From Botryllus schlosseri (Eukaryota), in NCBI GenBank assembly GCA_051294905.1, contig CM119381.1:25668001-25732000 (forward strand): a stretch of 64,000 nt of DNA. The letters are read 5' to 3'. The translations under genes were made by a program, and so were the position numbers. This document shows positions 20,605 through 44,100 of this stretch, one piece after another (positions within the stretch are counted from its first letter, which is position 1; the number at the start of each line of letters is the position of its first letter). The notes beneath the pieces are model-generated. The model did not search any database, had not been told where the DNA came from, and saw only the letters and a list, made by a program, of their open reading frames with translations.

Positions 20605-20785
20605 GGGATGACTGGCCAAGTGGCCATGCTCTCATATCACAGTCGTGTGAAGCTGTAAATAACTACGTTCATATCCCCCAGACAGACAGACGGATTCCAA
20701 CTTCTAAGCACTCAAGGTTACGCACTGGTATTGGAAATGTAAGGGCATTATGGCCTTCAAATCATTGGTTTTTATTATTATTTTT
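20605..20785 (+). mobile_element. Possible tRNA-derived SINE
   Basis: A-box-like TGGCCAAGTGG (20613-20623), imperfect B-box gttcatatccc (20667-20677), and a 3' (tta)n/T-rich tail. Single copy, no TSD seen. Confidence 0.3.
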
Positions 20786-22329: not shown

Positions 22330-22634
22330 CTCGCGGGCCATTAAAAACCTCGTGGGCCATGGGTTGGCCACCCTGATCTAAATGATCTGTAGGCCTACAT
22401 ATAAATTGGGCACATACAGACTCGTAATAAGGTTTAGAAAGCATTGAGATAGCTCATGCTTTCTGCTATTCTGTCACTGTGTTAATCACTGAGAAAAATA
22501 CCGTAACCCGTCTTAATATATTATTGCTACCGGTATGTTATTGGATTGGGAAAGTTTCATGTTTTACAGAAGATCAATTCATTATATTTTCTATACACTT
22601 ACAGTCTGTAATATTCCATAACCATAAGTCCACA

Positions 22635-23678: not shown

Positions 23679-24752
23679 TGCGGGGAGGATTTCAGGCCCC
23701 AGTTGCTGTTTCGGATACCCCTTGAATTGGTTTGTCTGTATTTTGTTATGAAAACTTCAATCGTGGTGCTTTGTCGATCTCCACACTTGGCATTATAGTA
23801 AGCTGACTGAGCGTGAATACATGACTTCGTTTGTTCGTACATGTGTGCTGGCTGGCTGTCTGCTCGGTTTCGCTGCTATGACCTGGAACTATTTCCTTTG
23901 AGATGTGTGTGACGGAGTAGTATTTGTTTCGAACTGTGTGCTGGCATGATATGACATCTATAATCCTCATATTCTTGACTGTAATTTCTCATTGATAGGG
24001 CTTGAAACGGTGATTCAAGCACTGAAATCTGAATCGTGTATTAATTCTAATAATTCAGGTCGGGTAGTGAGATATGATATTTTCAAGTCCTGAAATTGAA
24101 CACTAAGAGTAAATTTACCGATGAGAATTCTAGTTTCGATACCATTTTCCTCTGTGGCAGCCTTAAAACCTCGATTAGTCCTATCGCAGCATACGGAACA
24201 TGTAGCCTATAGTACAAAGTTACGTACATCTACCTGAGTGGAAATGAGATATCTGTGAGGTTGTGATCAAAATTAATATGAAATTATCATTAATGTGATG
24301 TAGAACTGGTACATTCTTTGTGGTTACATGAAAGGTAGCCTACATATTTTGACTTTCCACATCATACTGTTATAATGGCTTAGTGACTTACACTTGGCTA
24401 GAAGCCCAATACTATATTGAGAATCGAATCACTGAGGTAGCCTACTCAGACCAGCCCTACTCATTGAGTGATGCGGTTGTAAGCGTCCTGCGTCCATTTG
24501 CCTTGATCATGTGTAATTTGAAGTTTTGTGTGATATATCCTTGCCAAAGACCTGTCTAGTTGATATTGGTGCATGTTAAGACGTGATGAAATGATATACC
24601 ATTTTGAATGTGTTATCTAAACCAATTTTATACTTGTACAAGATTTCTCGAACCAATTTGAAAATTTTCACATCCGAACTGGCTATAACTGCTGCTGAAA
24701 TTTTTCCAGGATGTTATAATAATGTCTGCTAGCAGCTAGCTTATGATAAGCC

Positions 24753-25349
24753 ATGTCTGAATGGCAATCAATAGTGGCTACCGGGGTGACGCAGAATTCA
24801 TATGGCTCGTTCAGACGCTCCGGCCGCAAGCCAGCTCAAGCCATGGCGCAGCATTTTGTGGATTCAGCTGATACTCTGCAGGGGATTTCGTTGAAGTATA
24901 ACGTTAACATGGAAGATCTGCGGAGGATCAATAAACTGCATTACACGGATTCGATACAGTCGCGCCAGTTTTTAAACATTCCGATCTTGAAAGACTCGGA
25001 CATGGCCAAAACTATACCTGCACCATCGAATAAGCCTGATAAAATACCCGACAGAAATTGTAACGGAGCTGTACATGGGACAGATAAGAAAGTTGAGAAG
25101 AGTTCAGGTGCAGGCCGAGAATCAGAATCTACCGTCCATGATTTCTTACGAAAACTCGATATGCAAATAAGCTCGACAAAACAGATAGCATCGACGATGC
25201 TGTCTGAGAATGATTACAAACTTCCGAATAGCGGTCAGGCCTCTACGGCCCGATACATGGAGAAAGGGGAGTTTGAGGATTCCGTCCGCACCGCGTTTTC
25301 AAACTCTAATTCTTATCATAATTCTACTGATGAACATTTTAAACTTTGA
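24753..25349 (+). CDS. LysM domain-containing protein (LYSMD1/2-like), intronless CDS, 198 aa
   Basis: LysM motif HFVDSADTLQGISLKYNVNMEDLRRINKL...LNIP, an N-terminal SYGS and a downstream DFLRKLD.QI segment, as recalled for LYSMD1/2. Confidence 0.85.
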   Translation: MSEWQSIVATGVTQNSYGSFRRSGRKPAQAMAQHFVDSADTLQGISLKYNVNMEDLRRINKLHYTDSIQSRQFLNIPILKDSDMAKTIPAPSNKPDKIPDRNCNGAVHGTDKKVEKSSGAGRESESTVHDFLRKLDMQISSTKQIASTMLSENDYKLPNSGQASTARYMEKGEFEDSVRTAFSNSNSYHNSTDEHFKL

Positions 25350-26556
25350 CCAAACGGGTCTGTAATGAAACTGTGATCTTACTCTGTAGTGAATTTTATG
25401 CATTTCGCCCATCCTTATTGGCTTCTATGATATGATGTAGCAGCCTTCAGCGATTTTCTGCCTGTTAGGGAATGGTTTATTAGCGTATACCCTTTTTGAT
25501 CATGCTTATTTATTCTTCAATTGATTAATTCAATTGGCTAGTGGGGCATTCTTCTTAATACGCAGCTCAGAGGTACTGTTAGTTACTTGGCCATACAATC
25601 CTGATATGCCGTTAAAAAGATATCACCGCAAAATTTCATATCCAGCTCAACGATGGTCATCCTACATAGTATGACAATTTTAGCATATTTATATAATCAT
25701 GCTCTACTACCTAAAATCTGTTTGCACATTTGAGCTGCACGGTACTGATGTAATCATACACAACAGGCTAATCTAGAACTAACATTTAGTTTAGGTATCA
25801 TGAATGTTTGTTAGCTAATGTCTAAAGGGCCTAATCCAAGGGTGTGTGCTTTGCTAGAAGTTATCAGTTTTAATATTGTCTCGTTTGGATCACTGAGCAC
25901 TTCACCGAATTTATAGTTGCTTTGTGAACTTACTTTATTAATGCTTCATATTTTGCCAACACCGGAACTTGTTCATTCCGAACATTGGTCTTATATAGCA
26001 GTAAGATTTCAGACCATCCTCACTCTTACACGGATGCCAATTATTGCTGACATTATTAACCCACTGTCCATAGGCAAGTTCCAGCAGTGTTTGCACGAGT
26101 AATTCAATGTGAAGCGACTTGAAGTAAATCATACTCTTCCTCCTATTTAGAAATTTTAGTCATCCTCAAGTTTTGACATCGTAATTCGGCTATACGGCTG
26201 ATGTTGCACATGGGACATATCAATAACATTCATGAATACTATATTCCTCTTAATCTTTTAGTCATTATCTCAGGCTTCCTGATTTTATATCTATTCTAGC
26301 TACCAGCCCATTTCTTGCGAGCAGGATTCTGAAAGTCAAATATTGTATAATGATATGTGAAGCCATTTTTGAGGCTATGTCAAATGCTCACTTTTGAGCA
26401 CTTGATCGTTGTAGATATATTTTGAGACTCCTGTCAATTGCACCGCTAAAATGGATACCAAGCTCGAAAAGAGTTTTTTCAATGGTGATTTGATATTAAT
26501 TCATGTATAAAATGTTTTGACAATTTGAAAATGAGTAGAAATTTGTGTACGTTACA

Positions 26557-26965
26557 TCGGGTTACCATAATTCCTTATTTTGAGATCCATAAAAGAGACA
26601 TTTTTAAATTACAAAAGTTATGCTAGGGTTAAAAATTTTACGGGAAATTGTTTTGTGTTGACTAAAAAAAGGCCATTTTTTCAACTAGACTTATTAAAGG
26701 CCCGCTCTACCGTAAACTGATTTATTGTCAACCTTTTTATTAGTCAACCTTGCCATCGCTGTCGTCAAGATCCAGATTTCCCGTCATTCATGGCGTTTTT
26801 TCGTTGTCCCTGTATAATCACTGGGCTGTCAGCTATAAAGGCAGCTATAAAGGAGGTCGATTTGCCGAAAAGGAGGACACTTGGGCCGTTGGGCGTTCTC
26901 AGAGGACATTTCCGATTTCTTGAAAAAGAAGGCCAAATCCTAAATAAGGACGTATGGAAACCCTA
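26557..26965. mobile_element. hAT-type MITE
   Basis: Termini tcgggttaccata/tatggaaacccta. TSD acgttaca/acggtaca (1 mismatch). Confidence 0.7.
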
Positions 26966-27727
26966 ACGGTACACCGTGGCTCCATCTCCTGTAAATTCTA
27001 AGTTCCAATCCAATACATTATGACGATGTTCTTAAGAATTAGTGTTTGGAACACTCTCTCTGTATTCCGACTTCATTTTCGAACTTCCCTGATTTAGTGT
27101 GTTGAACTGTCTTCTGTACATTTGAATTTTTCTGATTACTATTTGTAGGTAGGTAACTAGCTGTCAACCATTGTAGTCTGTACTTGGTGAAACTCATAGT
27201 TAATGTGAAACTCGTTTTGTCACGTGAATTGTTTTGTTTATCGTGGGACTTTACTCGGCTGGTGTAATATGTTGTGTGCCATTGTCGATTTGGTTACACT
27301 GTGTGCTGTGACGTGGCAAGTGTTCAGTAATCATACGCGCATATATCTTCGCAGCACCCACTTTTCTTTTATAATGCCGCATTTTCATAGTAATGATGTC
27401 CGATGAAAGTGAAACGATTTTCGTGCACGTGTCAAAGTAATGCATGTCAACACTACGTTATTATTACAGTACACTGTAACTGTGAGTATATTTTCACCAG
27501 GTATATCCTCATATGTATATTAGAGATATATAGACTATGGTTTAGTTTGTAGTTTCCGTTGCACACGCTGAACGAGATGTGGAAATGAGTTTGTGATCCA
27601 TTTCCTACTCCAGGAAAAGCTCACACGATTCTCTGGCCGTATTTTGACTCAAGTCTTTCTGCATCAAATTTATGTGGTTCATGCTTTTGCTGTTTAACTG
27701 TAAATTGGACTGCGGAAGAAAGTAGGA

Positions 27728-30700
27728 ATGTCTGCTGCAAGATTGGAAAATCTTTCAATGAAGTCGCCCGCTCAAATTCAAATTGTGCGGACTGCCATAC
27801 CGTGTCCAGATGTGCCTAGAGAAGTTGGTGATGGAATGGAGATGGAAGATACGGGCTTCGTTAAGCATTCGGTCGGTAACCCCGCCTCGCCGCCGCGTAT
27901 CGTAGAATCGAGAGCTTCTAGCGGTTATTCCACTCCTGTGGTGCTGATATCCAATCAGAAACCAGTGCAAATGCCGCTGAGTCAAAGGTCAGACGATGCG
28001 TTGTCGCTGAGGGATTCGATACCAAGCCCCACCCCTTCCGACCCGCTTTTTATGAGGAACGACAAGTTTTTGGTCGAGGAAAAAGCGGCGCTCAAGGATC
28101 ATTTGCGGATACAAGTGCAGGTACTGTTGTTTGAATTGCCGACTTGAAGGTGCCAGAATGTTATGTTTTCAAAATTATAAATCAAACGGATTATCTGATT
28201 GCTTTTCAAGCGGCTTAGGTACATCTTAAACCAGAGGTTCCAAGCCTTAACACTGTGGTCCGCGTTCAAAACCTTGAAAAATCATTACCCCAACATTGTT
28301 TCGGCTTTTATTGACTCACGAGTCTCAGAACTGTTGAACATAAAACACGTTGTGGCTTGCACACGCCATTGTCACGTAGATATGTAGAGCCAAGCTCATG
28401 GTCATTTTCGTCATACTTCCTTCTTCTAGCAGGGGTAGCCTTTGTGCGAGTTGTATCATATTCAGGGCAATTTTTTTTTGACATGTCTAAAAAAGTCAAA
28501 ATTGTAAACGAGTTGACTTTTTTTACAACCTACATTTCGTTTGTATCGTAGATTTTGCACGGTCGGGGAACTTATCTTTTGACATTTTACAGCTTGTTGC
28601 CTACTTTATAGGCCTATCATTGTAGACGGCCCATTGCCATTGTCTGCTCATTGTGAATCATAAACATTCAAATAAAACAAATAGGTTGACATGGTGTTAT
28701 CGTTATGCTCAACGTACCGCAATATCCTAACTGAAGCAAGACTGCGTGGGCATTGCATGGTTCTTACATCAAGAAGCGCGTTATGAAAAATTGAGATGTA
28801 GACACCATTGTCAGAATGAAGCAACACGGTTTGTCACCGGCAGCGTACGCACAACTTCAGTGTTTTCAGCCAACAACTGCTGCTGTTAAATGTTCTTTCT
28901 CCATTCTTGGCAAGCTTCTTAGTAAGGACAGACACTTCCTACCCGAGAATGTATGAAAGTTTCTTTCGTTGTACTACAACAGACTTTGATTATTTCTACC
29001 ATAGAGGTGATGTAACTACTGGAATTCTTCATAGGGCCAGATTTGTTAAAATCAACTTTTTTCATGAATCAATTTGTCAGTTATTGGGTCATAAAAGTTT
29101 TTTCAGGCCGAACTACTTCGGAAGGACCAAGAGTTTATACCAGAAATTATGATAAGTAGTACAATTCTAACATGTAGGAAAACACCTAATTTGCATTTTG
29201 CATACTTTAGGTCAAAATAGCCCTAATCATAGTATTCAAAGTAAAAAAGGAAAGAAATCTTGGGATATAAAAGCTGACTTAGCAGTCCTATTTTTAATAA
29301 ATTTAAATCTAATATATGTATTTTGTAAAGTGGAGTGCGCTTGAAGATGATAATTTTTTTTCATGACCCACAGGTTCGTAAACCCTCGTCTCGAACCATG
29401 CATTTTCTTATTCTGCTTGACTACAATCAGCCGATCCTCGACTATCTCTCATGAGAAACGGCAGACACCTTTTCAGTAGCCTAACATGTCAATACAGATG
29501 GTCGGTAACTCCAAATCTCGAGAATTTTCCCGTTTAGTTTCCATTCAGGGATACCGTATGTCCTTAACGGCGCCATTGATACAATTTAGTAAATTGGCTG
29601 TCCGACGTTTAGTTGCCTTGCGAGCTTGATGTTTTTTCTGAGGGATATTCATTTCGCCACCATGATTACGCCACTAACTGGGGTAGTGCCGAGATTCGCA
29701 TGTTTCATGATGAATATGCTTCAAGGTTGTTATTTTATGGTAACGTGTCGTATTGTCAGGTCAATCAAGAATTGAAACGCCTTCTCGTCGCTTCAATAGG
29801 CGAGGATATGGGTTATCACTACGAACGTCTCGCAACGGAAAAGGCTCAAATAGAAATCGAGAATGAGGATTTGAAGAAAAAGTTGATGACGCAGGTAGAC
29901 TTTGCTTTGTCGTGTTAGTTTCCCACATAATGATTATTGATTAACCACATCAATGTACAGAAATATCACTATCAGACTGTGAACATGACATTGTACAGAA
30001 GGCCCGTTTATTCTTGAAAGTTTAATATTTGCATTTTTTTAGTCCTAAAATACGATCATAGTCTGTGCTTACCCTATGGGTCGTTGTTCTTCGATATGGC
30101 TTATCACTGGGCTAACGATCGGTTCTGTTATTTTCATCTGCTCGAGACACAATGTTCGATGCAATATGTAAGACACAATGCGATATAGTGAACTCGGGGC
30201 AGGATGTCGAAATCGAAACAACAAAGGTTGTATATCAATCGATCAACATCCGCCTCGGCCTACTGGTTGAATAGAGCTTGATACAATGATGCAAACAAAA
30301 CTATATTTTTAGTTGGTGAATTAACTCTTAGCGGTAAAGAGCTTATAATGTCAGTACTGGTACTCAAACTCGTGTTAAATCATGTATCACCGTTCAAGAA
30401 TCGTCAGAATCAATACTCCAATCAGATACAAGCACTCTGATCATTGTGTATATCCGGGTTACTTCCAATATGAATATGCTATACAATTATGCTGGCATCT
30501 CCCGTATTTCTCACAGGAAGAAGAGACTGAACGTCTTAACATCTCTTGCGACGTTTGGAGAAGCAAATTCCTGGCCGGCCGCGTTCAATGCGACGAGCTC
30601 CAAGAAAGCGTAATCGCGGCGCAGCGCAGGCAGCGCGAAATGGAAACGGCCGTGCGGGCGTTGATCCGAGAACACCGGACGCGAACGGAACATCTCGACG

Positions 30701-32560
30701 AGATTCGCGATACCTTGAGCCATCTGCGCGACGCTCTGCAATGGGGAAAAGGTGCGATGTTGTTTGGGCGTGACGGCCTGTTCGCAATTGTGCAACATTA
30801 GACAATGAGCTTGGCATTTTTTAATACCGATTCGTGCGTCCTATTTGTGGTGAATCACGGGCAAGAGGAAATGCGGTCACAGCGCGCCTTTTGTCTAATT
30901 GCAATGACTATACATCAAGTACAGCGCTGGTGTTTCTGATACGCTGTACTCCCGGTTCTATCGAAGTACGGTATGACAGATGATTTATGGAAAAAATGTA
31001 ATTTTACAAATCCCGATTCTGTAAACTTGACACACTACTTGAGTGATTCCTAAGCTTTACTAACCTGACGAACCCTTACGAGGCCGTTCACACTTTCATT
31101 TGTAGAACTTCTTGTAGGTACAGAACTTCAATATACAATTGTATGGTATATCATATTGAAATGAACCCAAATATTTGTGTGCCTTGTAGTCTACGTTGTA
31201 TCAACATACGCCAACAAAGTCTATGCCAACAGAATGAGTTCTAAAAATAGTACATTAAGCTTAACCGATCTCTTCTCGTTATATTTGGTGATACAGTTGT
31301 TGACATACAATGTTCTTTCCGATTCTCTACTAGTTGTTGACGACTGGGCCTTGAGTGTCAGCCCAAAATCAGTGTTGTAACCAAGTCACGAGGCTCCGAG
31401 TCGCAAGTCAATCTCACTTTTATAGTTTTGACTTGAGTCACGTCGAGTCATTTTCAATTGACCACCGAGTCAAGTCCAAGTCGGCGAGCAGAGGGTCGAG
31501 TCCGAGTCATGGTATTATGACTCGAGTACGAGTCCCAAGTCATTGTGTTGACTGATCAGTTTCCAATTAAAGTCTGGAAAGCCCACTTTTTATAACTCTG
31601 TTTGGTGATATCGAATGGTTCGCATTCATAACATACCAATTTTCCTCACTTTTGGCAGTTTATGATCGCATTTTCAAGTACCAGTACCAATAGAAGAAAT
31701 TCCAACAGTGTGGTTACTTGAATATTCGAAATTACAATGAAATGTCGGTTTTGGCCGTCTGAGTCTCGTGTCATATGACTTGTCGAGTCATGCGCAATGA
31801 CTCGAGTCCAAGTCGAGTCAATACACAGATTGACTCGAGTTGAGTCATTTCCGTATTTTCAGAATGACTCGAGCGATCAGAAAATTGACTCGAGTCATTA
31901 CAACCCTGCCAAAAATATTCGGGTTCATGTAAATATGAATATATTATTCAATAATATGTTCTTATAGAAGCCTGGTTCGCAAAATTAACTGTGCATCAAC
32001 GGTGTTAGAAGAACAATACCATCATGAAACAACACAAAAAGAAGATAATTAATATTTACCGCAAATCGGTGTGACCTTCTGTATGACTCAGGTGTTTGTT
32101 TGGACCTCCAGCTTCCGAGTATGTACAACTGCAGTAATGATAAATTTATTTTGCAGGAAGCGGCCAAGTTGCGAAGCAAGACGAACCGAACGGCCCCGTC
32201 GATGAACAGTGTTTGAAATTGTCTCACACGATATCGTCTCGGTTATTAGGCTCGTTCCCGCCGGCCCAGTCGAAAAGTGCAGGCTACAAAAAGTACTTGC
32301 AATCTTGGAACAAAATCGCAGGGGAAATGTCAAGCTCCGGCGAGCCGGAGTACGAGGTTAAAGCTACGATGGCTGAAAAATATGTGACTCAACTTTTACA
32401 AGAAACCTATTCTGTTGCTGTGGGTACTGCGGTCGAGCTGAGGCTACAGGATAGAAGACAGTCTGGTACTGTGGCGGGACGCTTCCACGTTAACGCGAGG
32501 CACGATAATTTGACGCTGGCGTGTTGCGGTAGATGTACAGGAGATATCCATGTCGTATAA
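27728..32560 (+). CDS. BLZF1: Golgin-45 (basic leucine zipper nuclear factor 1), 4 coding exons
   Basis: Exons 27728-28120, 29760-29894, 30517-30751, 32157-32560. GDGME, QVNQELKRLLVASIGEDMGYHYERLATEK, CDVWRSKFLAGRV, LQWG and C-terminal GRFH..CCGRCTGDIHVV match recalled golgin-45. Confidence 0.93.
28463..29225 (+). mobile_element. Non-autonomous hAT derivative with decayed transposase C-terminal (dimerisation-like) coding remnant
   Basis: Termini cagggcaattttt/aaaatagcccta, TSD atcatatt/atcatagt. 28801-28988 reads DTIVRMKQHGLSPAAYAQLQCFQPTTAAVKCSFSILGKLLSKDRHFLPENV*KFLSLYYN. Second copy at 63637-64000. Confidence 0.75.
31245..31960 (+). repeat. Family B copy with degenerate hammerhead, split by a family A MITE
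   Basis: Family B sequence stops at gtcagcccaaaat (31369) and resumes as ccaaaaatattcgggtt (31909). Confidence 0.85.
31370..31908 (+). mobile_element. Full-length family A hAT MITE (TIR caGKgttgtaa, GACTCGAGTC-rich arms)
   Basis: cagtgttgtaa/ttacaaccctg. TSD cccaaaat/ccaaaaat (1 mismatch). Confidence 0.88.
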
Positions 32561-32723
32561 ATGATACTGTGCCCTTTTTGATGTCTAAATTTAAACCATG
32601 ACCAAAGAAGTGCGATTGTTTAGGTGCTGTTTGGTGCGTGATATGACGTTCCTGTTATTTATTGTTATTTCTTAGCGTGGAAGTGTGTGAGACCAATATA
32701 TTGACCACGACATCACTTGTGAC

Positions 32724-33336
32724 CAGACTTGGACAACTGTATAATTCTAATTGTCTAATTAGAGCAGGGGTTTCAAGCCTTTTTTAGACATGCCCCCCCT
32801 TTATGATAGTGAAAAATTTCGCGCCCCCCTTTACCGTCATATCACAAAATCCGACCGAGATTCCAGCAACCTCAACGGATTGTTTGATGGCAAGGAAGGT
32901 TATGACTGTTGATGAGAGAATTAAAAAATATGAAATTCGGTCTATATATAGAGAAACACGCGTGAATTGGAGGTAAATCGCGCAGAGTGGACCGCTTCTC
33001 CGCTTTCACGCCCCTCCAAGGGCGCAAAATGCATGTAATCTGATTATAGTCTAAAATGTGAAATGTTTTTTATGCTCTAACCTAAATTCTAATGAAATTT
33101 CTGGTTTTTCTGTAAATGCTACCGGAGAACTGTGTAGTACGAAACTAGCCAAGCTTGCTATAAAGACATTTTCTATTCTCATACCTATGGGAAAGAACTA
33201 TGAATTGAAATTAGCACAATGTCCTAGTTTTCCCGAATTCAGTAATTCTAATTCTAAAGTAGTTTGGAAAAAGCCTGCATCGCAATAATTCTAATATAAT
33301 TTTGAATAGCTGAAAATTACCTAGTTTCCAAGTCTG
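32724..33336. mobile_element. Family O MITE with a nested truncated family H element (~32765-33025)
   Basis: TIR cagacttggacaact/tagtttccaagtctg, flanks cttgtgac/cttctgtc (6 of 8). The inner part is similar to 40250-40561. Confidence 0.7.
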
Positions 33337-34782
33337 CTTCTGTCCACTCTGGATGGTGCTAGTGACAATGTAACACATATATAAGCTACTTAACAATGGC
33401 CATGATTCTTACTATTTATGCCTAGTTTTCTGTACATAGATACATATTATATAGACCTTACCGGTTGTGAAGCGCCGTACATTTCGAATTTGAAACGACT
33501 GCTGTGTGAATTTCTGTGCAATAAATCGAGTACACATTTTCGGATGACTTGGCTATCTTCGAATTGTTATGCAACTTGGAGCCACTGTGCGAGAATCGCG
33601 GCGTTGTGGTCGTCACACTGATTTGAAGAGAATTGATAGGTACGGAACTTGAAAATACAATTGGATAAAGTAGACTCGAATGTTTACGGCTGGCAATCGT
33701 CAGCAACTACTATATAGGCTTACCATATTTTGGAAATCTAAAAAGAGGACACTTTTCCAGAAATTTGAGACTTGCAAAACCGGAGAAGAATTCTCAAAAA
33801 CCGGTGAATTTTTCCCACTTTGTGATCGGTTGACTAAAAAAAAGGTCAAAAATACCGCTTTTCTTCCCGCATTGCTAGGTGGATGACTAAAAAAAAAGGT
33901 CATCTTTCCGCCCAGAGCTAAAATAACCGTTTTTCCCTCCGAAATACCCGCCGGAGCGTCAAAAGGAAAATACTAGTTCGCGGCACTCTAGTACCCTGAG
34001 TGGCGAGTAGGCTAGTTTGGTGATGAGCTATGTTGCATTGTAGCGCTGCTACACAAATACGTGAGGGGACTGCGGGCAACGAGCCCAGCCGATGTCGTCT
34101 TCGTAACCCCTTCCATAGTGTTGTAGTTTTACCCTAGGCTCCTCCTCGCCATCCGTCTGCGTAATCAGCGTCTGGAGTGGAAAGAGGCCGCGCTAAAGTT
34201 GGCATGTCAGGAAGTATAGGTCTGGTGTAAAATGGCCATGGAATGCTCGAGCAGTCCAATCGTCTCACCGGTTGAGAATCACTGTACTAGATAATTCAAA
34301 CGAATTTCGTACCCTTGCTTTTCGTCACGCCACGTACGTCGGAGCGTTGTTTTGAGCTTTGCTAACACACCGCTTGTATATCGCGTGCAAGGGCAGCCCA
34401 GCACAACTTCCCACGCAGGCTTTATCGACGATCATCAAGAGATTTAGCATCATATCTCGACTACGAGATCACTATCTGCTTGTGGCATAATATTCCCTCA
34501 AGATGAAAATAATGCTAATCCTCTAACAAGGCCTTAAAGGTCAACTGCATCTTCATAGACAACTTTGCGGAATCATGTTCAGTATTTGTTTTCATACCAA
34601 AATTACCGCCTTTCCGTGTTTCCACTCCATCGGAAATTGCCGTAATTTTGACTCAAAGTCCCAATATTGGTATGTTTACAGAAAAAGCAGAATGTGCATT
34701 GTGACGTCAAGTACATGACACATCTTCTCGCCACCGATCCCAGCGGCTGTTAGTGTTCTCGCAGTTTTTATTCTAGTCAGTT

Positions 34783-35313
34783 ATGGCCGAAGTTTCCATT
34801 GTAACGGATTCGCCATAATTGATATTGAAACTGAGTCCGAGTACTCGGATGTCGAATGTAAGTATCATTTTTGCACTTACTTACACAATTAACGTTCAAA
34901 TGCGGATACTGGATGGATATTGCCAGCTTATGTCATCTATAAGGGAAAGTTTATGCTGTAAGGAGGTTCCGAGAGTTACTGACAGAATAAAAGAAATTGT
35001 ATCACAGGATTCAATTCAGTGTGTCTGGACGTTGACGTATTGGAGATATAATAACATCAAGTTCGATGCAGGAGCGAAACGGGGCTCTGTTTCGGTTGCC
35101 AAGTACTTTTCTCGCACTATTACACTTATTTTTGCTTTTCAGGAAGCTGAGACATACTGTCTACAGAAATTTTGTTCGCTGGGTATGGGGATTCTGTGGC
35201 AAAAACTAGTGGACAATCCTGCCTGACTGCCTCCATGCGTTGCTACTGCTGTCCGAACAACATTTACGTCAAGTTCTTACAAAGGATCCCAGTTCAGTAA
35301 TGCCACATTGTGA
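34783..35313 (+). pseudogene. Decayed KolX / P2X7 C-terminal ballast-like gene of the Kolobok element
   Basis: GYCQLMSSIRESLCCKEVP, then after the acceptor at 35142 RKLRHTVYRNFVRWVWGFCGKN*(TAG 35207-09)..ILP..PCVATAVRTTF...YKG. Contains frameshifts and a stop. Confidence 0.72.
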
Positions 35314-35349
35314 ATGAACAGTTTTATTCCAAATAATAAACGCATATAA

Positions 35350-35660
35350 CTAATCGACCAAAATAATGGCTGTGTCAGGCAGAGAAGCATATCGGGATTT
35401 GTGTCGGGCAATAGCTTCCTCTCTGCTAAAGTTGATTATGCTGCTAGTCAGAGGTGGAACCGTCTCAGCGGAATCGCTCGACTCAACAGTTTCTGGTCCA
35501 GTTCTGATGAGTGCTTGCACTTCTTCGACAAGGTCATTGCAGTAATCTAGAACAGGCATAGATGTGACGAAATTTTTTGACGCAGTCAAATCAACGGCAG
35601 TTACCAAATGTTGAATTTTCAAGTATCTTGTGGACAGTAAATTCCCTGTTTTTGTAAATA
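35350..35660 (-). pseudogene. Out-of-frame C-terminal remnant of the Kolobok transposase (DDE core deleted)
   Basis: TKTG.L..RY.K...DYCNDLVEEV...PPLTS...REEAIARHKSRY resembles recalled C-termini of this transposase group. Confidence 0.55.
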
Positions 35661-36468
35661 ACTGTCTCCGACCTGACATCCAAAGCTTTTCAACTCAACT
35701 GAGGTGCCAACATCTTGAGAGGTGCGTATATGAGATTTACAATATTGTATCATCGATAATACTATACTCTTACTTTTGCTTCTAACATGACATGCAGACT
35801 TCCGTACTTGAACAGCTTTATCAGCATACGATTTGGGGCTTGGAAACAGATGTTCCTCATTCTGTGATCCACCTTCTGCTCCTTCTACATCATTTGTTTT
35901 TGAAGATGTGGCCTAAAGCGTTACAGTATTAGGATTGCTAGGGGCCCTAGGGCAAATTCTAGTTACACTCAAATTGTGAGAAAGTTGTACAATTGACTTA
36001 ATATTAACCGCTGACTCAACCGAAAGATCGGTTGCTTGTACTCTTGTAGCACTAATTGACACAATACATTTCCCTTACCTGATTTCGGACACTTTGTAGC
36101 TTCAGAAGAGCATTCCGTTGACATTTTCTTTTCACAATTTTACTGGCGCCTGAAAATAACGTGGGAACGGCAGTACGCCTGAGAGTTACCTGTGCTCGAT
36201 AGCCTAATTGCTTGTGTATCTCAGTTACTTCATTGAAACATGATGGTAAAAAGTGATCTGAGCATAAAAAAAACAGTTTGCCTTTCGTTGTATGGAAGTC
36301 CGCACGTTTGGTCTTCACGGCGTTCGCCCAGGCGTAATACCTTGTCCGATCGGTGTTTGGGTTTGGACAGCGATGAAAAGACACTTTGGGTACCGAATAT
36401 TGCGTATTCGAACAACCATACGCGACACAAGATGTACCTCCGTGCCTCATCTTCTTCATACCTTCCAT
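35619..36468 (-). CDS. THAP-domain ORF, predicted spliced 207-aa truncated transposase
   Basis: C2CH THAP signature CVAYGC...W...LCSDHF...AVPTLF. Predicted exons 36079-36468, 35774-35912 and 35619-35713 with GT-AG ends. The stop arises near the deletion junction. Confidence 0.7.
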
Positions 36469-36741
36469 AATCGCACTCAAATCCAGTATCAGTATCAAAA
36501 TCAATCCTAACAGGAATAACTTTCTGTTTACCAGGACTTTTGCCGTGTCAGTTACATGACGTCATTTCATAGCTGAATGATTTCATATCCGTTTTTCGGC
36601 TTTTCGATTTATAATTTAAATTACTTGAAAACTATAAGGTATTTTCAATTTTCATTATTTTATTCATATTCCTAACCACATAATGTACGAAATAAGGCAA
36701 AGTCATTTTGAAGATGCAGTTGACCTTTAAGAACGACTCAG

Positions 36742-37357
36742 CAATGTTCCCTCTAATTTTTGACGAGTCTGCGCACACCCACCTACTCACCGCGCAGACC
36801 CTTGGACAACAGTGCGCAAGCGCAACTATAGAGACTGTAGGCGCCACAAGACAATGCCCAACTGATTCAAGTCTATTACTGATTGTGACGCAATCCACAC
36901 TCTCTCTGAATGGCGTCACAATCAGTACGAGACGTGAATCAGTTAGGCATTGTTCTGATTGTTTTGAAACAATGTCCATTGCACACTTTCAAAGCGAATT
37001 TAGGTAAGTTTCAGCGGTCTGACCGGATTATAATTTATATTTTTTGAATCAGTACGACAGTAGCTTTCGAATAAGACAAGTTTTAATTAAATTTAGTGGT
37101 CGGGTCGCCTTCAATAGGATTATCGTTCTAATAGCAAATGCGGTAGAAATATGAGAGTTGCATCTCAACACCCGGTGTCGCTATACGCAACTACGTTATC
37201 ACTGAAGAGGTCTACTGCTTCCCGGCTAGTTTGTAAAGGCTATGGCGCAACGACTAAAAAAAGGTCATCACTTCAGATTTTTTGTGCGCAACTTGGATTT
37301 TCTGTGCGCAGTGACCTTGACAGCAATGCGCACGTGCGCAGCTTAGAGGGAACATTG
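36742..37357. mobile_element. Family D MITE with ~410-bp unclassified insert (~36830-37240)
   Basis: TIR caatgttccctctaa/ttagagggaacattg, TSD cgactcag/cgactcgg. The family D interior is interrupted at gcgcaa. Confidence 0.82.
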
Positions 37358-38148
37358 CGACTCGGCATTCAAAACCACAAGCTACCACGTAATACGACAA
37401 CAACTAGAACGCCAAACAGACACCTGCACCAACCCCTTCAAAACACAGACACACCGATTTCAAAAAAGTGATTCAATTCTCATGTCAAAACATCACGAAC
37501 GGCAAAATACATTTACATAAACATCGAATGTTAATAGCATCAGTACGGCTTAATTACCAAGCCGACGACGAAGCAGTTCGAAAACTCGTCAGCAGCTTCC
37601 GAGATTCGTCTATTTCTACGTCCTGACCTTATCATCCCAAAATGGCGTATAAATAACTAGGGCTGCGCACAATGATTGAGTACTCGAATCTGAATCGAGT
37701 ATCAGAGATATTATTTTACAGTAATGAAATTATGCTTCCCGCTAAAAATTTTATGTATCAGCAAAAAGATAGTATTTTCCACCTTAGCCTAAAACCACAG
37801 TCGTATCGCAGCATACGAAACATATAAGCACCGCACTTTAGTGGAAACGACACATCTCCGAAGCTAAGTGCGTTGCATTAGGTACGGTAGAAAAAATACC
37901 AATTTATCCTTGTAATGCATCTTCAAGGCAGCATTAAGGTACACATTCAAGCTTTTTACACCTTTCGAACACATACGACGCTGCAATGAGTGATAATCAA
38001 CTCAGAACCAAATCGATTCAGTTCAGCCCTATAAATAACCGATATAAGCGCTTTCGACATCAACTGTTCATACTCCCTAATCGGATGCCGCAAAAATTCC
38101 ACAATTGGAACAACATTTCTTTGGCATCCAAACGATCGCGTTATCGCA

Positions 38149-41100
38149 TTACGAAGCCGAAGGAGGGGGCGGGGGCGGCGCGGGGGGCATTCCGTACCCC
38201 ATCCCCATGCCGTAACCCATATTCCCGTAACCCATGTTCCACTGTTGTTGCTGGTCGCCGCCAGACTGGTCGTTGGTCTTGCTGTCGTCGCTACCGGGAG
38301 GTGGAGGTGGCACAGGTACGGGTCCCGGGGGCATCGGCGGTTGGCCCATTCCGGCCATGTTACCGCCCCACATGCCCCAGCCCATGTTGCCGTAGCCCAT
38401 CATGTTCTGAGCTGTAGACAGAAAGGCAATATTAAGTACAGTAACAACCCCTAAAGCAATGGTCGAAAAGTCTTCGACAACTAGATAATTCTAAGTAGAG
38501 AAAAATGCTGGTAATCGAATTCTATTCATTTGAGAAACGTGTTTTATCTCTAATTTGAACTCTAAACCTAATTTCTGGTTTTGATTTGATAAGAACACAA
38601 CACTTGTCTATTTTCTTTTGAATTTAAATCAAGTTTTTGCAAATTCAGTAATTCCAATCTAAATTTGAAAAACTAGCTATAAATCTAATTTGGAAATGCT
38701 GAATATTTTAGTTGTACAACTTGCTAGACCGTTCAGCATTAAAAAAAGGTTTCCCTTTGCCCGAAAGAATTTGACCCGGTTGTTCACAATCCACAAATTC
38801 CGGAACCAGCACACAACGAACCCGCATAATTCATATTCTGACTGCCGTCGCTTCCGTCCGTGGCGCCACCCCATTGCTGTCCCTGCCAGCCTGATTGTCC
38901 CGACTCGTCCGGCCCGCTACCAGGTGGAGGAGGCGGCTGCGATGACCCGCCCGGTGGTGGCGGAGGAGGGTTCATCATGCCCATACCCCCGTTAGGGTCC
39001 TGCCATCCCATACTGTTGTCGTAGCCCTGCTGTCCCATCCACATGTTACCTGGTGGTAAAATGTAATCTTGGTGTCGTGGTCTGATACTTGATTGGTGAC
39101 ATGCTAAGTAATACATTCATTTTCGAATTTATTATAACAGTGTTGATGCATCGTGTTGATGACAATATGATGACATTTCTACTGCCGAAATCCTTGTTCA
39201 ACCCCACCAGGTGTGTAAGAAAAGGCGTATTCGCGCACCTTGCATGCCTCCCATGTTGCCTTGCATGGCTCCCATGTTGTTGCCGCCCATCGAGTTGTAG
39301 TCTTGCTGATAGCCCTGTTGCTGATAGTCGTTGGAGCCAGAGTTATTGCTGTATCCTCCGCTGTTATTGCCCCCTCTGTAGTTGCCCCGGCCGCCACCTC
39401 CTCGTCCGCCACCGCGGTTCCACGAACCCCTGTTTCCACCCATGTTACTTTGCCTGAATTCAGAGAATAAAGCTTGCACTGCTGCGCTCTACTTGCCGAC
39501 TCTGACCGACATTTCATTATAATTTTGAAGAATAGTAAAGTAACCACATTATTGAGATTTCGTCTATTGGTACTGGTACTTGAAAATGCAACCAGAAACT
39601 GCCAAAAGTGAGGAAAATTAGCATATTATATGCAAATCATTCGATATCACCAACCAACCAGAGCTATAAAAAGTGGGTTTACAATACTTTTAACTGAAAA
39701 TTTAGTAGTCAACACCATACTCGGACTCGACCCTCTGCTCGATGACGTGACTCGGTATGAGTCAAAAATGACTCGAGTCAAAACTATAAAGTGAAATTGA
39801 CTTGTGACTTGGTAACAACCCTGAGTCCAGAAGTCGGTTTACCATCTCAAGTCTTGATTAATCGCGAGGCAAATTGCGGCTTTAGCGGATTCAATTATTT
39901 TAAATCAGAATCATTCGAAATACTATGTCAATAGGCTTGTTCTACATACCTTTTTTAAATTTTACTGTCTACTCGATAAAACTGTACGGATGCCAAGAAA
40001 ACGATGTTTTACAAATTTGGCGCAATTACTACAAAAAGTTATTTGCGTTGGGAAATTCTATCATTATCGATTTGGAATAAATTCATTTTCATTAATATCA
40101 AACAAATCCAAGATTGTCTCATCTCATCTCTCTCTCTCTCTCTCCCTAATGTCCCAAGTCCAAATCCAGCTTCAAAATTGTCAGTAATCCACATATGACC
40201 TGAATCTTCAAATCCACATTTTGGAAGCAAAATCCGTGATAGTCTACAGCAGTGGTTATCAAACTTTTTTTAGACACGCCCCCCTTTTTGATAATGAAAA
40301 ATTTCGCGCCCCCCCCCCCCCTATCGTCATATCACAAAATCCAACTGGGATGCTAGCAACCCTAACAAATTGTTTGGTAATATGGTCGGTTATGAATGTT
40401 GATGAGTCATGAGAGAATAAAAAATACGAAATTGGGTCTATATAGAGAGAAACACGCGTGTATTGGAGGTAAATCGGGCGGAGCGCGAAAATTTTTTTCA
40501 GGTGACCGGTTCTTCGCGCCCCCTTCAAATGTTTCACGCCCCCCCAGGTTGAGAACCCCTGGTCTACAGGATTTACTGGACACATGACGAGTTTGGACTC
40601 AATTTTCAAAGTGGAAGGTTGAGAGTAGCATCTTGGCATACACTTAAATCAAAAACATCAGAACCGGCAAAATAGAACTTCATAACAATATAAACACCAC
40701 AGATCACTCACCCGCCATATCCCTGACTCTGGTTCTGCGTGCCGACCCCCATGAGCGGGGGAGGTTTCTGGGATCCGCCACCCTGACCGGACGACGTCCA
40801 GGGGTTGGGGCCTTGCGGACCGCCGCCCCCGCCCGCCTTCACGCTCGGCGGAGGGCCCTGACCCAGCTCGGCCATTAGAGAAAGGTACTGAAGGGAAAAT
40901 CGAAAGGTTAGCATTAAGCTTGAATGTCACTAAGAAATCGGGTCACTCAGTTTGATTTAGCACGATTATTCATGCAACCAAGTTGACAATATAAAGATTT
41001 TTGTGGAAATATAACTTCAATGAAGACCTGAACGTATTTCAAAGCACGAAAATACCATTATCTATTAATATTCGGTATTTGGAGGCTCCTAATCCTTATC

Positions 41101-44100
41101 CGACCAAACCTAATCCCAGCACATATATACAAATGGCCTAATTCCCCAAGTGCCATACATAATAATTCCTATTCAGTGCAATTGAATAGCATATTCATAT
41201 TGAAATGAACCCGAAAGTTTTCGGCTGACACTCGTCAGCAACTAGTAGAGAATTGGAAAGAACATTGTATCACAAAACATGACGTCACCACAGCATGAAA
41301 TTTCGTACAAGAGAACGTTCAATGCACTATTTTTAGATATTCAGTACAACATCCTGTTTCGAATACATTAAGCAAAATCGATGCATTGCTTTCATAATAA
41401 CAACAGTTATCACATTTCTAATGCCATATTCATCAAGTGCCGAACTCGCAAAGTATTGTATATCCCAATTCATGCTTGGATTCGGTATTCATTTTCGAAT
41501 TTATCAATATGATATCAATCAATCAATGCATCACTTTCATTATAATAGTAGAAATAGTTATCACTAGGGCATCGCTAGGGCAAGTTTTAGCAATTCTTTT
41601 TTACAGCCTCCTAAATACTCGGAAGTTATGTAGAATGCAGTTTTAATCTGTTTGAAGGAATATTGTGGCGCGACTTTTTGCAACTTTTGTCCATTTTTTT
41701 CATGCAACTTTTTCAATTTTTCATGAAAGTTTGTTCGATTTTTCATGCGATCGACTATTTACTGGAAATATTTGGCAGTATATGTAAATAGATCGCTTGA
41801 TTATGTCACTGTTTTTTTTTAGTCAACCGACCAAAATGTGGTCTTCTAGTGAAACTTTTGCAAATCAAACTTTTCTACTGCAAAACTTGTCCTGGTTATC
41901 ACAATTCTAATGTCTCATTCAACACAAAAACCAACTCACCTCGCTGTCCATCTTAGCTTTATCCGCGTGAGACATCTGCTGGTTTGCGTTTTCCTGCTGT
42001 TGCAGCCCCACGCTGGGCGCCGGCGTCATGCAATCCTGCGCGATGTGACCGCGACCCCCGCATTTCGTGCACACCGTCGTGTTAGTGATGTTCTGATTCT
42101 CCGGCCGCAACCATTCTCTCTCCCTGTCAACGAGCGCAAAGCGATCAGTTTCCATCCCCAACACAGAAAGATACAATCAAACACAAACCGTGGCATTTGG
42201 TCGTCTCTGAGAGTCCCGTTCAACCGCGCCAATTCCATGAGCTGGTTCTTCCGCAAGTCGTTTTGCCCTTCTGGTTGTTCAATTCCCTGTCATAACCATA
42301 TCAAATTTAACAAACCGGGCCATCGCGCATCGGGGGGGGGGGGTTGAAGTTTCCAAATTTACCAAATTAGCATTTTAATAAAGTAATAAAGAAATTAAAT
42401 ACAATCAAGTACAAGTGAAAATTCTAATGTAGGATATATAAGCCGGTATAAGCTTCACTTTTGCATGATACAAACACTGCATTTCACATACAAAGGAATA
42501 CGTAAAACTCAGCAGGAGATGGCACACCGCTTTGAGCTGCAAACTGGGTATTATGGCTCCTGCAAACAATCACAACACAAAGCTACAGAGAGAAAACAGG
42601 GGCAATAGCCAGATGAGCTCAACAAGGAATTCAAAGCACATGATGTTATTTTAAATACTCAACACCTCCAAGGCGAACTTGTCTATGATGGCTATTTACT
42701 CTGCAAATGACAAATTAAGACTTAACATTGAGGGTGCACACAATATTTAGCCATCACCTGTTTGATAATCCTGTTGATTTCGGCAGTCGCTTTCTGTACG
42801 TCTTCTATTTTCGTGCCCGTTATCAGAGCATGTAACGGCTCGTCTTCCCCGGGAAGAGGCATTCCGTCCTTCCTGCCGATCTTCCCTTCCTTCACCGATC
42901 CTTTCCCTCTGATCATGATCTTGCAGTTACTCTGAAAATTCAATATTATTAGTGTTTTTTTTTAAAAAGGAACTACCTTCCCGGTCGTGCGATCAAAGAA
43001 AGCAACTCAAATCAAAAATTACCTCTTTCTCAATTTTCTTCAACGTGTTTCCTCTCGGACCGATGAGAAGACCGACGAAATTGATGCTGGGGTTCAAGTC
43101 GGCCGGTATGTTGATCTGCTCGCTGATTCTTTGAATCGGAGGCCTACGAAATAAATCGAAAACGTTCACACACATCACAGATAATTCACCGTACACTTGT
43201 ATAAAATTCGCTGCTGAAAACGAACTGCATACCGCTATTGGTGGATACTGACCGCTCAGACAGAATTGGGTATAAAACTCAAAAATCAATAATTAGATTG
43301 GAGCCTACATGGTGTGAGCTCAGTATTGGGCCCATCGACCAAAACTTGTTCATCCAGTTTGTCTTACCACAGTTAATTTGTAAAATTACATATATGTAGG
43401 ATAGATATATGCGTTTATAATACATATTTATCAAACACAATCTTACTTATTGCAAGTACGGTATATTTATTTCTGACACATTATCATTATCAGATTTTGT
43501 GACCAGGTGACGACATGTAGCGAATCAAAGGTTGTACCGCTGGCCATCATTTCACAGAAAAGTTCCTCTTATTTTGTAAAACGAACTTCAGCATGCCGTT
43601 CTTAGTAGCAGTGCTTCGAAACGGACTAGTGACGTGGACAATTTCAATTTTATAAAATGGCGGTAATTAATATTTACTTGTAGTCCATGGGAGGCTTGTA
43701 GTTTTCGTTGATGCGGATCATGTCCTGGATCAGTTTGTGTCGATCTTCCTCGTATTTCTTCCTGGTGCGATATTCGCGCGTGTTCAGTCTCTTGCCGTCA
43801 TTGTTATAAATCGGCTCGGGAGACGGCGACCTAAAATGACAGCGGGAAAGAACGGATGAATAAGGTAGACATCACCATAGCTATATATCTACCGGTAAAT
43901 GTAGACTACAGACATTGAATACACAGTGTCTACAATTCGGCATCAACAGCCAAAGATTCTATTTCAGCCGTTAGTTTCATCACCAATGGGAGTAAACAAA
44001 TCGTTTAACGGTAGGGCTGGGCATTAAGAACGAGTAATCGAGCAGTGCCAGTCAGGCTGTTCAGTAGTGATCAACCTGCGGAATTGCCAATCATTACTTT

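What the first reader, a model, noticed from the sequence alone, without database searches (positions are those of the whole stretch)
34538..35313. Kolobok-type transposon carrying a P2X7-ballast-like (KolX) gene
Seen: TTAA-flanked 18-bp TIRs starting AGG, and a plus-strand remnant with C-x-x-C...LCC and RKLRHTVYRNFVRWVWG...ILP..CV..AVR..F. Known, from recall: the P2X7 cytoplasmic ballast has KLRHCAYRCYATWRFG...ILPSCCRWRIRKEF, and Kolobok elements have TTAA TSDs and an oppositely oriented accessory protein reported to resemble that domain. Inference: an invertebrate-chordate element from the pool that may have donated the ballast to vertebrate P2X7. This copy is a pseudogene (TAG at 35207, frameshifts).
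Basis: partly seen in the sequence, partly recalled or inferred. Interest (0 to 1): 0.7.

Follow-up and report, generated by a model that had tools for sequence, protein, structure and literature searches.

The report
Dead Kolobok transposon with KolX remnant
This is a 2.2-kb, internally deleted and immobile-by-itself copy of a Kolobok "jumping gene" that still carries a broken copy of the transposon's second gene (KolX), the gene family already published as the likely source of the tail domain of the vertebrate P2X7 receptor; it is a correct but ordinary example of a known kind.

Summary
A TTAA-flanked element with perfect 18-bp inverted ends (AGGTCAACTGCATCTTCA) exists, but it runs from 34538 to 36726 (2189 bp); 35313 is only the stop codon of the plus-strand gene. 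That gene (34783-35313) is a decayed KolX / P2X7-ballast-like gene. A KolX ORF from an unrelated Kolobok-like locus, which passes Pfam P2RX7_C, hits the window in three collinear pieces in three frames (summed E 2.3e-8). A ~90% identical sibling copy keeps the C-terminal half intact and also passes Pfam P2RX7_C (E 1.3e-6). The TAG at 35207 is private to this copy.

The minus strand holds an intact THAP domain and the transposase tail; the DDE core is deleted. Kolobok rather than piggyBac is supported by:
- AG...CT termini;
- the THAP domain;
- nearest THAP relatives that carry the Kolobok core motifs;
- a last-catalytic-E block in the sibling copy;
- the same convergent two-gene layout in the unrelated locus.

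The family is high-copy and transcribed in this genome. The KolX-P2X7 link and its evolutionary reading were published by Kojima and Bao in 2022. First readers of this scan also noted other Kolobok/KolX copies elsewhere in this genome. Verdict: new member of a known kind, low interest.

The parts
34534..34537 (.). Left TTAA (presumed target-site duplication)
   Evidence: No empty site was seen, so duplication is inferred from the identical TTAA at 36727-36730.
34538..34555 (+). Left 18-bp terminal inverted repeat AGGTCAACTGCATCTTCA (5'-AG terminus)
   Evidence: I13, 100% complementary; 2 matches vs 0.01 expected.
34702..34721 (+). Left subterminal box containing TGACGTCA, 164 nt from the end and 61 nt upstream of the KolX ATG
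   Evidence: (I2, 20 nt, 85% complementary to 36545-36564). A promoter or binding-site role is inferred only.
34783..35313 (+). KolX (P2X7-ballast-like, Pfam P2RX7_C) pseudogene: ATG 34783, stop TGA 35311-35313, and at least four frame changes plus TAG 35207-35209
34921..34986 (+). KolX zinc-binding part CQLMSSIRESLCCKEVPRVTDR (frame 1); KCGY just upstream lies in another frame
   Evidence: tblastn HSP 1 to L004 KolX residues 18-39, 41% identity; motif found once in the window vs 0.085 expected.
34995..35048 (+). KolX part NCITGFNSVCLDVDVLEI (second frame)
   Evidence: tblastn HSP 2 to L004 KolX residues 44-64, 57% identity; matches the CIT...F...CL...VL columns of published Fig. S6.
35141..35206 (+). 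KolX part RKLRHTVYRNFVRWVWGFCGKN (third frame), ended by the private TAG at 35207-35209
   Evidence: P2RX7_C is the only Pfam hit for this 22-aa piece, E 0.11. It is 68% identical to the intact sibling ORF. Other copies read C at 35207: X1 depth 2575 of 2588, RNA reads 26 of 26.
35226..35233 (+). 8-bp insertion ACTGCCTC (frameshift) relative to sibling copy L001
   Evidence: DNA alignment; coordinates.
35227..35310 (+). KolX C-terminal end LPPCVATAVRTTFTSSSYKGSQFSNATL
   Evidence: 82% identical to the L001 ORF; compare CVVTAVR in Kolobok-1_XT 2p.
35314..35349 (.). 36-bp spacer between the two convergent genes, with AATAAA on both strands (35335 on +, 35323 on -)
35350..35656 (-). Transposase C-terminal tail (…YKNREFTVHKILENSTF / DYCNDLVEEV…ILVD, stop 35350-35352), with a 58-nt intron at 35547-35604
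   Evidence: The intron is spliced in 50 RNA reads. The tail is 83% identical to P0151/L001. The penultimate exon of L001 matches the transposase tail of L004, E 4e-7.
35656..35657 (-). Internal deletion junction: expressed relatives continue upstream with different sequence (…RRSTVVKYRK)
   Evidence: 52 RNA reads with loose ends at 35656; L001 diverges at the same point; no DDE-core similarity anywhere in the window.
35619..36468 (-). THAP-only ORF left by the deletion: exon 1 36468-36079 (THAP domain), intron 36078-35913, exon 2 35912-35619; 227 codons by my count
   Evidence: Pfam THAP E 1.6e-13; the intron joint is seen in contigs of runs X5 and X14; ORF check. This is the subject of the scan's separate note s1-291593.
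36545..36564 (-). Right subterminal box containing TGACGTCA, 162 nt from the end and 76 nt upstream of the THAP ATG
36709..36726 (-). Right 18-bp terminal inverted repeat (…CT-3' terminus)
36727..36730 (.). Right TTAA

Best explanation
Window 34538-36726 is a non-autonomous, internally deleted copy of a two-gene Kolobok DNA transposon of the KolX-bearing (Kol0) lineage. The ancestral element had two genes transcribed inward from the ends. On one strand was a THAP-DDE transposase. On the other was KolX, a zinc-binding protein with the fold known as the P2X7 cytoplasmic ballast. In this copy the whole catalytic core was lost between the linker after the THAP domain and the C-terminal tail (junction at 35656/35657). 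KolX has decayed to a pseudogene, with one private stop, an 8-bp insertion and further frame changes. The copy keeps perfect 18-bp ends and TTAA flanks, so it could move only if a transposase from an autonomous family member cut at those ends and pasted it into another TTAA. Shown: the anatomy, the homologies, the high copy number and the transcription of the family. Inferred: mobilisation in trans, TTAA as a duplication, and any role for the subterminal TGACGTCA boxes. The biochemical role of KolX in transposition is unknown, here and in the literature.
For: Ends and target: perfect 18-bp TIRs, TTAA on both sides, termini 5'-AG...CT-3'. This fits the published Kolobok definition of TTAA plus RR/YY termini, as opposed to piggyBac, and the AGG-starting ends of Xenopus Kolobok and T2-MITEs.

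KolX:
- Sibling copy L001 is ~90% identical in DNA. Its intact 92-aa ORF passes Pfam P2RX7_C (E 1.3e-6, 28.9 bits vs cutoff 23.5), and its only PDB hits are P2X7.
- That ORF maps to window 35048-35310 with E 1.6e-21.
- An independent KolX ORF in L004 passes P2RX7_C (E 8.2e-9) and hits the window in three collinear pieces, summed E 2.3e-8.
- Six of the seven conserved cysteine positions are still readable.

Transposase type:
- The THAP domain scores E 1.6e-13.
- The best THAP relatives in 1.8 billion proteins include P0018 and P0149, which carry the Kolobok core strings DSPGHSAKY / TDRH / DVWH, as in Kolobok_1_XT and _BF in published Data S5.
- P0004, 46% identical to the window THAP, is 61% identical to P0018.
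- L001 residues 1-35 match the last-catalytic-E block of P0149 (51%, E 3e-11).
- L004 shows the same convergent layout of THAP + Kolobok core on one strand and KolX on the other.

Family: word depth is 340-38,000 inside the element against 13 in the unique flank, and RNA reads include spliced introns.
Against: This copy has no DDE core, so the superfamily assignment rests on relatives: one 905-bp sibling contig, library proteins at 33-46% identity in the THAP domain, and one unrelated locus. No full-length autonomous copy of this family was recovered. No empty site was seen, so the TTAA duplication is inferred. The N-terminal frame changes of KolX are inferred from frames only, because L001 does not reach that part. 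The window pieces alone give no significant Pfam or PDB hit. THAP domains also head P-element transposases.
Confidence: 0.88

Rival explanations
1. A piggyBac-superfamily element (also TTAA-specific) carrying a KolX-like accessory gene, as published for a few piggyBac families.
For: TTAA flanks. [quoted passage not shown]
Against: The termini are AGG...CCT; the published contrast is that Kolobok, unlike piggyBac, has RR/YY ends. The piggyBac-borne proteins lack most of the seven cysteines, whereas this remnant keeps CGxC, CC, CIT and PxC. The partner gene starts with THAP. Its relatives and the sibling copy carry Kolobok core and last-E blocks.
Confidence: 0.04
2. A P-superfamily element (THAP-headed transposase) that happens to sit between TTAA sites, with an unrelated captured ballast-domain gene.
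For: A THAP N-terminus is shared with P-element/THAP9 transposases (established knowledge). Other notes of this scan report P elements in this genome (unverified).
Against: By established knowledge, P elements make 7-8 bp duplications, not TTAA. The nearest THAP relatives with a core carry Kolobok strings that match published Kolobok alignments. KolX is the published hallmark of the Kol0 Kolobok lineage. The same gene pair recurs in L004.
Confidence: 0.04
3. Not one mobile unit: a decayed host ballast-domain (nanor/ZCD-like) gene and a host THAP gene lying by chance between two copies of a small inverted repeat.
For: Ballast-like (ZCD) genes exist as host genes in many animals (Rump et al. 2020). 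The outer ~200 bp at each end are far more abundant than the interior, as expected if MITEs were involved.
Against: The whole interior, not only the ends, is repeated 26- to 1000-fold relative to the flank. A separate contig (L001) carries the same tail-to-tail junction of the two genes at ~90% identity. The unique flank depth resumes exactly outside the TTAAs. The two ends share symmetric subterminal boxes placed in front of each gene.
Confidence: 0.03

Closest known systems
Kol0 lineage of the Kolobok superfamily (type: Kolobok-1_XT; also Kolobok-1_BF, -1_SKow, -1_NV, -1_CTe), Kojima & Bao 2022 (PMC9587614)
   Same: TTAA target, purine-purine termini, and two genes: a transposase plus KolX with the ballast fold. 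The KolX motifs line up column by column with published Fig. S6: CxCGxC, ExxCCxE, CIT, CL...VL, R..xYRxF..W, (I/V)xPxCxxxA(V/I)RxxF, YxGF.
   Different: This copy has lost the DDE core and its KolX is broken. The first of the seven conserved cysteines reads F. At 2.2 kb it is much shorter than the 7-14 kb full-length Xenopus elements. The held literature does not describe the family from this organism; another note of this scan calls it a sea squirt, which I did not verify.
Xenopus XKol transposons and T2-MITEs (Hikosaka & Konishi 2018, PMC6004289)
   Same: TTAA target, ends beginning AGG (T2-MITE motif AGGRR; XKol ends such as AGGACATGTCAACCCC), a THAP domain with C2CH and an AVPT(I/L)F box, and a few long copies alongside very many short derivatives sharing the ends.
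   Different: The end is AGGTC, so it does not fit AGGRR strictly. No H2CH or DDE domain remains in this copy.
P2X7 cytoplasmic ballast / zebrafish Nanor (Pfam P2RX7_C, PF20478; PDB 6u9v)
   Same: Same domain family by profile. The sibling ORF aligns to rat P2X7 539-594, including LRH.AYR..W, ILP.C.R..F and Y.GF.
   Different: It is a free-standing transposon gene of about 170 codons, not a receptor tail, and here it is a pseudogene. Whether this lineage is close to the donor of the P2X7 tail was not tested.
piggyBac families with a KolX-like second protein (piggyBac-2_GrCh, piggyBac-14_PI; Data S6 of PMC9587614)
   Same: TTAA target and an accessory protein resembling the KolX C-terminal half.
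   Different: Those proteins lack most of the conserved cysteines, and their elements encode piggyBac transposases. Here the cysteine-rich half is present and the partner gene is THAP/Kolobok-type.

Membership tests
Kolobok superfamily | [quoted passage not shown] | tested here: met
   TTAA directly abuts both ends. Duplication as such is inferred, because no empty site was found in the reads.
Kolobok superfamily | Termini 5'-RR ... YY-3' (distinguishes it from piggyBac; PMC9587614) | tested here: met
   5'-AG(G)...(C)CT-3'; definition; Xenopus Kolobok ends all begin AG.
Kolobok superfamily | DDD/E transposase with the Kolobok signature (first-D block DSPG-HSAKY, TDRH, C/DxxH = DVWH, zinc finger, last-E block) | tested here: inconclusive
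   Absent from this copy (deleted). Indirect support: sibling L001 keeps a last-E block matching P0149 (E 3e-11). THAP relatives P0018 and P0149 carry the core strings, which match published Data S5. No full-length family member was obtained.
Kolobok superfamily | N-terminal THAP DNA-binding domain (C2CH, P/W/F, AVPTIF box), usual in Kolobok transposases (PMC6004289) | tested here: met
   Pfam THAP E 1.6e-13; C-x4-C...C-x2-H, FHRCP, W and AVPTLF are readable. Not exclusive to Kolobok, since P elements have it too.
Kol0 lineage of Kolobok | Second gene KolX with the cytoplasmic-ballast fold (Pfam P2RX7_C) | tested here: met
   Present as a pseudogene. Three collinear tblastn hits from a P2RX7_C-positive ORF, E 2.3e-8. 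The sibling copy's intact half passes the Pfam threshold.
Kol0 lineage of Kolobok | Seven conserved zinc-binding cysteines in KolX | tested here: inconclusive
   Six positions are readable as C (C-G-x-C, CC, CIT, P-x-C), and the first reads F in TFKCGYC. The gene is broken, so function is excluded anyway.
piggyBac superfamily | piggyBac-type DDD transposase and its typical termini | tested here: not met
   The ends are AGG/CCT. The only transposase remnants are THAP and a tail shared with Kolobok-type relatives.
Autonomous transposon | Complete transposase ORF between the TIRs | tested here: not met
   Only THAP, linker and C-terminal tail remain, with the junction at 35656/35657.

The most novel reading that the evidence does not exclude
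The family is a still-transcribed Kol0 Kolobok lineage in what another note of this scan calls a sea squirt, a member of the sister group of vertebrates. If so, its KolX (with the LRH..YR.F..W and ILP.C...VR..F strings shared with P2X7) could be the closest living transposon relative of the gene captured to make the P2X7 ballast and nanor. That would make the published capture hypothesis testable by phylogeny. A smaller point is that the symmetric TGACGTCA boxes in front of both inward-facing genes may be the element's own promoters or THAP-binding sites.
Probability: 0.1. Interest if true: 0.45.

Novelty: new member of a known kind. Interest (0 to 1): 0.2.

Why it matters
It matters little on its own. 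The link between Kolobok KolX and the P2X7 ballast, and the claim that P2X7 arose by capturing a KolX gene, were published in 2022. This copy is a dead deletion derivative. It does add a well-documented, abundant and transcribed KolX-bearing Kolobok family in this genome, with clear ends, convergent gene layout and subterminal boxes. That is useful for repeat annotation and as one more taxon for a KolX/P2X7/nanor tree. It also shows that ballast-like hits in this genome are transposon genes, not host receptor relatives.

Tried and rejected
Window pieces on their own:
- Pfam on the KolX pieces gave no hit, except P2RX7_C at E 0.11 for the 22-aa piece.
- phmmer against PDB gave nothing.
- The search for homologous proteins with the 135-aa ORF gave nothing, and nothing with the L001 KolX piece. 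With the length filter these blanks say little.

Searches for more copies:
- The JGI metagenome scan by protein and by a 33-nt DNA pattern found nothing.
- The look-up of encoding contigs found P0018 and P0149 not on record.
- P0004, P0002 and P0097 lie on short contigs without neighbours.

Structure:
- AlphaFold2 of the 92-aa L001 half-domain without an alignment gave pLDDT 48.8, so I ran no fold search on it.
I did not resend it.

Other:
- No clear TIRs could be found for the old element in L004.
- The last exon of the window transposase tail has no detectable similarity to L004.
- The motif-regex test is supportive but partly post hoc. My CIT pattern missed the site because of a spacing I set too tightly.

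- No search or fold used a joined (spliced) THAP model or an X-joined KolX read-through. Only stop-free pieces by reference were used.
- Published KolX and P2X7 sequences from the paper's supplement were read but not typed into tools, so no tree with P2X7 C-termini was built.

Full report
**1. What is in the sequence.** The 22-mer TTAAAGGTCAACTGCATCTTCA occurs exactly twice in the 64-kb window, at 34534-34555 (+) and 36709-36730 (-), against 0.01 expected. The repeat finder reports the same pair as 23 nt, 100% complementary (I13). The element is therefore 34538-36726, 2189 bp. It has 18-bp perfect terminal inverted repeats, termini 5'-AG...CT-3', and TTAA on both sides.

Beyond the TIRs, the two ends share only one more block, ATGACGTCAnGTAnnTGACAC. 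It lies 164 and 162 nt from the ends, and 61 and 76 nt upstream of the two start codons. The two genes converge. Their stop codons (35311-35313 on +, 35350-35352 on -) are 36 bp apart, and the spacer holds AATAAA on each strand.

**2. The plus-strand gene is a broken KolX.** Three-frame translation shows these pieces in order:
- MAEVSIVTDSP*, then AIIDIETESEYSDVE in another frame
- TFKCGY
- GYCQLMSSIRESLCCKEVPRVTDRIKE
- NCITGFNSVCLDVDVLEI
- ...RKLRHTVYRNFVRWVWGFCGKN, followed by TAG (35207-35209), then WTILP
- LPPCVATAVRTTFTSSSYKGSQFSNATL*

Taken alone, these pieces are too short for database significance. The only Pfam hit is P2RX7_C at E 0.11 for the 22-aa RKLRH piece. Two relatives settle the matter.

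(a) L001 is a 905-bp ENA contig found through the transposase tail. It is about 90% identical in DNA to window 35036-35656. Its KolX C-terminal half is an intact 92-codon frame.
- That frame passes Pfam P2RX7_C (E 1.3e-6, 28.9 bits, cutoff 23.5, profile 142-191 of 192).
- Its only PDB hits are P2X7 chains 6u9v and 8tr5, residues 539-594.
- It maps back to window 35048-35310 with E 1.6e-21, at 68-82% protein identity.

(b) L004 comes from a 520-kb ENA contig of another organism, reached through a THAP hit. Its minus-strand ORF 15591-15968 passes P2RX7_C (E 8.2e-9, 36.1 bits). tblastn of that ORF against the whole window gives three collinear plus-strand hits in three different frames: 34921-34986, 34995-35048 and 35144-35293. 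The summed E is 2.3e-8, and the next best hit anywhere has E 0.71.

The cysteine-rich half and the C-terminal half are therefore both KolX, and the frame changes are real. The strings line up with the published KolX/P2X7 alignment (Fig. S6 of PMC9587614). For example, CVATAVR compares with CVVTAVR of Kolobok-1_XT 2p. Six of the seven conserved cysteine positions are readable. Motif patterns drawn from the conserved columns each occur once in the window, all here, against 0-0.085 expected (partly post hoc).

**3. State of this copy.**
- Against L001, the window has TAG where L001 has CAA, and an 8-bp insertion ACTGCCTC at 35226-35233.
- Reads and contigs of other copies show C at 35207 (CAG). 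In X1 the depth is 2575 of 2588; in X23, 26 of 26 RNA reads. The stop is therefore private to this copy.
- RNA-read loose ends at 34820 show that relatives read ...GAT TTG CCA AGT GAT ATT... where the window has two extra bases. That explains the early stop after MAEVSIVTDSP (my reading).
- The other frame changes (about 34905-34915, about 34980, about 35048) are inferred from the frames only.

**4. The minus strand.** ORF 36504-36052 is an intact THAP domain (Pfam E 1.6e-13), with C-x4-C, FHRCP, W, C-x2-H and AVPTLF. Downstream lie a GT-AG intron (36078-35913) and a linker exon. At 35656/35657 there is a junction to the transposase tail (YKNREFTVHKILENSTF / DYCNDLVEEV...ILVD*), which has its own 58-nt intron at 35547-35604.

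The reads support this layout:
- The 58-nt intron is spliced in 50 reads.
- The 166-nt intron joint appears in contigs of X5 and X14.
- 52 reads run on at 35656 into different sequence, which translates as ...RRSTVVKYRK in frame with the tail.

L001 diverges from the window at the same place. No similarity to a DDE core exists anywhere in the window. This copy is therefore an internal-deletion derivative. The deletion leaves an open THAP-only frame of 227 codons by my count. That frame is the subject of another note of this scan (s1-291593), and I did not pursue it.

**5. Kolobok or piggyBac?** Published definitions give Kolobok TTAA duplications and, unlike piggyBac, 5'-RR/YY-3' termini. The Kol0 lineage (Kolobok-1_XT) encodes a transposase and KolX. 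Kolobok transposases usually have DDE, THAP and H2CH motifs. Xenopus Kolobok ends and T2-MITEs begin AG/AGGRR at TTAA sites. A few piggyBac families carry a KolX-like protein that lacks most of the cysteines.

In this element the ends are AGG/CCT, the partner gene is THAP-headed, and the cysteine-rich half is present. A full HMMER scan of 1.84 billion representatives with the THAP ORF found no close relative; the best were 43-46% identical. The hits do include P0018 and P0149, which combine this kind of THAP with DSPGHSAKY / SNE..S.AMEKEGL / TDRH / DVWH. Those are the blocks of Kolobok_1_XT1p, _BF1p and _2_DR in published Data S5. Further comparisons:
- The window THAP against P0018 gives E 2e-20.
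- P0004, 46% identical to the window, is 61% identical to P0018.
- The first 35 codons of L001 (…NTAGSESFNALLNHFCPK…) match the C-terminal last-E block of P0149 at 51% identity, E 3e-11.
- L004 carries THAP (10001-10390), a Kolobok core (10922-11871) and a tail ORF (15118-15390) on one strand. The tail's YPKYKKGQHIVRKVLKNQTF matches the L001 tail (E 4e-7). KolX lies on the other strand, converging.

The caveat is that I never obtained a full-length member of this very family.

**6. The family in the genome.** Contig word depth in the DNA run X1 varies as follows:

| Region | Depth |
|---|---|
| Unique left flank | 13 |
| Subterminal ~200 bp at each end | 19,000-38,000 |
| KolX | 2,900-4,700 |
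| Transposase tail | 7,500-14,700 |
| 35724-36346 | 340-790 |

Depth is not a copy number. The pattern is nevertheless that of a DNA-transposon family with very many short derivatives sharing the ends and tens of copies of this particular deletion form. Holders come from nine studies of one organism label. First readers of this scan also noted three other Kolobok/KolX copies on other pieces of this genome. I could not see those.

**7. Mechanism.** Shown: the structure, the homology, the decay, the abundance and the transcription of relatives. Inferred: the copy is inert by itself and could be cut at its 18-bp ends and reinserted at TTAA only by a transposase supplied by an autonomous relative. 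The TGACGTCA boxes may serve as inward promoters or protein-binding sites. What KolX does for the transposon is unknown.

**8. Novelty.** In the held literature, only Kojima & Bao 2022 links the P2X7 ballast with transposons. That paper already states that KolX has the ballast fold and that P2X7 and Nanor derive from KolX. Rump et al. 2020 had shown ballast-like domains across Metazoa. None of the four papers in the library that hold both 'Kolobok' and 'tunicate' is about Kolobok in tunicates, judging by their titles. This is a new member of a known kind, and a dead copy at that.

**9. Unexplained.** Eleven RNA reads join 34857 to 35143 (GT..AG on the plus strand). That join skips the whole cysteine-rich half. 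In the frame set by the ATG it runs straight into TGA (my reading). It is likely a non-productive or cryptic splice, but I could not test that. Abundant expressed relatives also diverge at 36359, in the middle of the THAP domain, and continue as ...PIAGEDYEDC. This points to further chimeric derivatives.

Noticed in passing
window 35619-36468 (-): The internal deletion leaves an open, spliced THAP-only frame of 227 codons by my count (the scan's note s1-291593 says 207). Its 166-nt intron joint (35913-36078) appears in contigs of two runs, but raw RNA reads of X23 give no cover between 35724 and 36079.
   Followed up: partly
window 34857 / 35143 (+): Eleven RNA reads splice GT(34858)..AG(35142), skipping the whole cysteine-rich half of KolX. 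In the ATG frame the join gives an immediate TGA, so it looks non-productive.
   Followed up: partly
window 36359 (-): 53 RNA reads and very high DNA depth (about 8,000-12,000 over 36347-36524) belong to relatives that share the first half of the THAP exon. They then continue with unrelated sequence (translated ...PIAGEDYEDC). This is an abundant, expressed chimeric derivative.
   Followed up: no
window 36742-36816 and 36851-36953: Twelve bases right of the element begins a ~75-bp repeat with extreme depth (about 112,000 vs 13 in unique flank). It is followed by a 47-nt-armed palindrome (87% complementary).
   Followed up: no
window 31300-31950 and 39500-41275: Several blocks of 25-100 nt at 79-95% complementarity lie 7.8-9.9 kb apart. 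They look like two copies of another repeat in inverted orientation, bracketing the region that contains the Kolobok copy.
   Followed up: no
window 18086-18706 (-), 22479-23678 (+), 24753-25349 (+): Long uninterrupted ORFs with Pfam adenylate kinase (E 1e-33), Brix domain (E 6e-33) and LysM (E 2e-7).
   Followed up: no
L004 10001-15968: An old, TIR-less Kolobok-like element in a 520-kb ENA contig of another organism. It has THAP, a Kolobok core and a tail on one strand and a P2RX7_C-positive KolX ORF on the other, amid reverse-transcriptase genes.
   Followed up: partly
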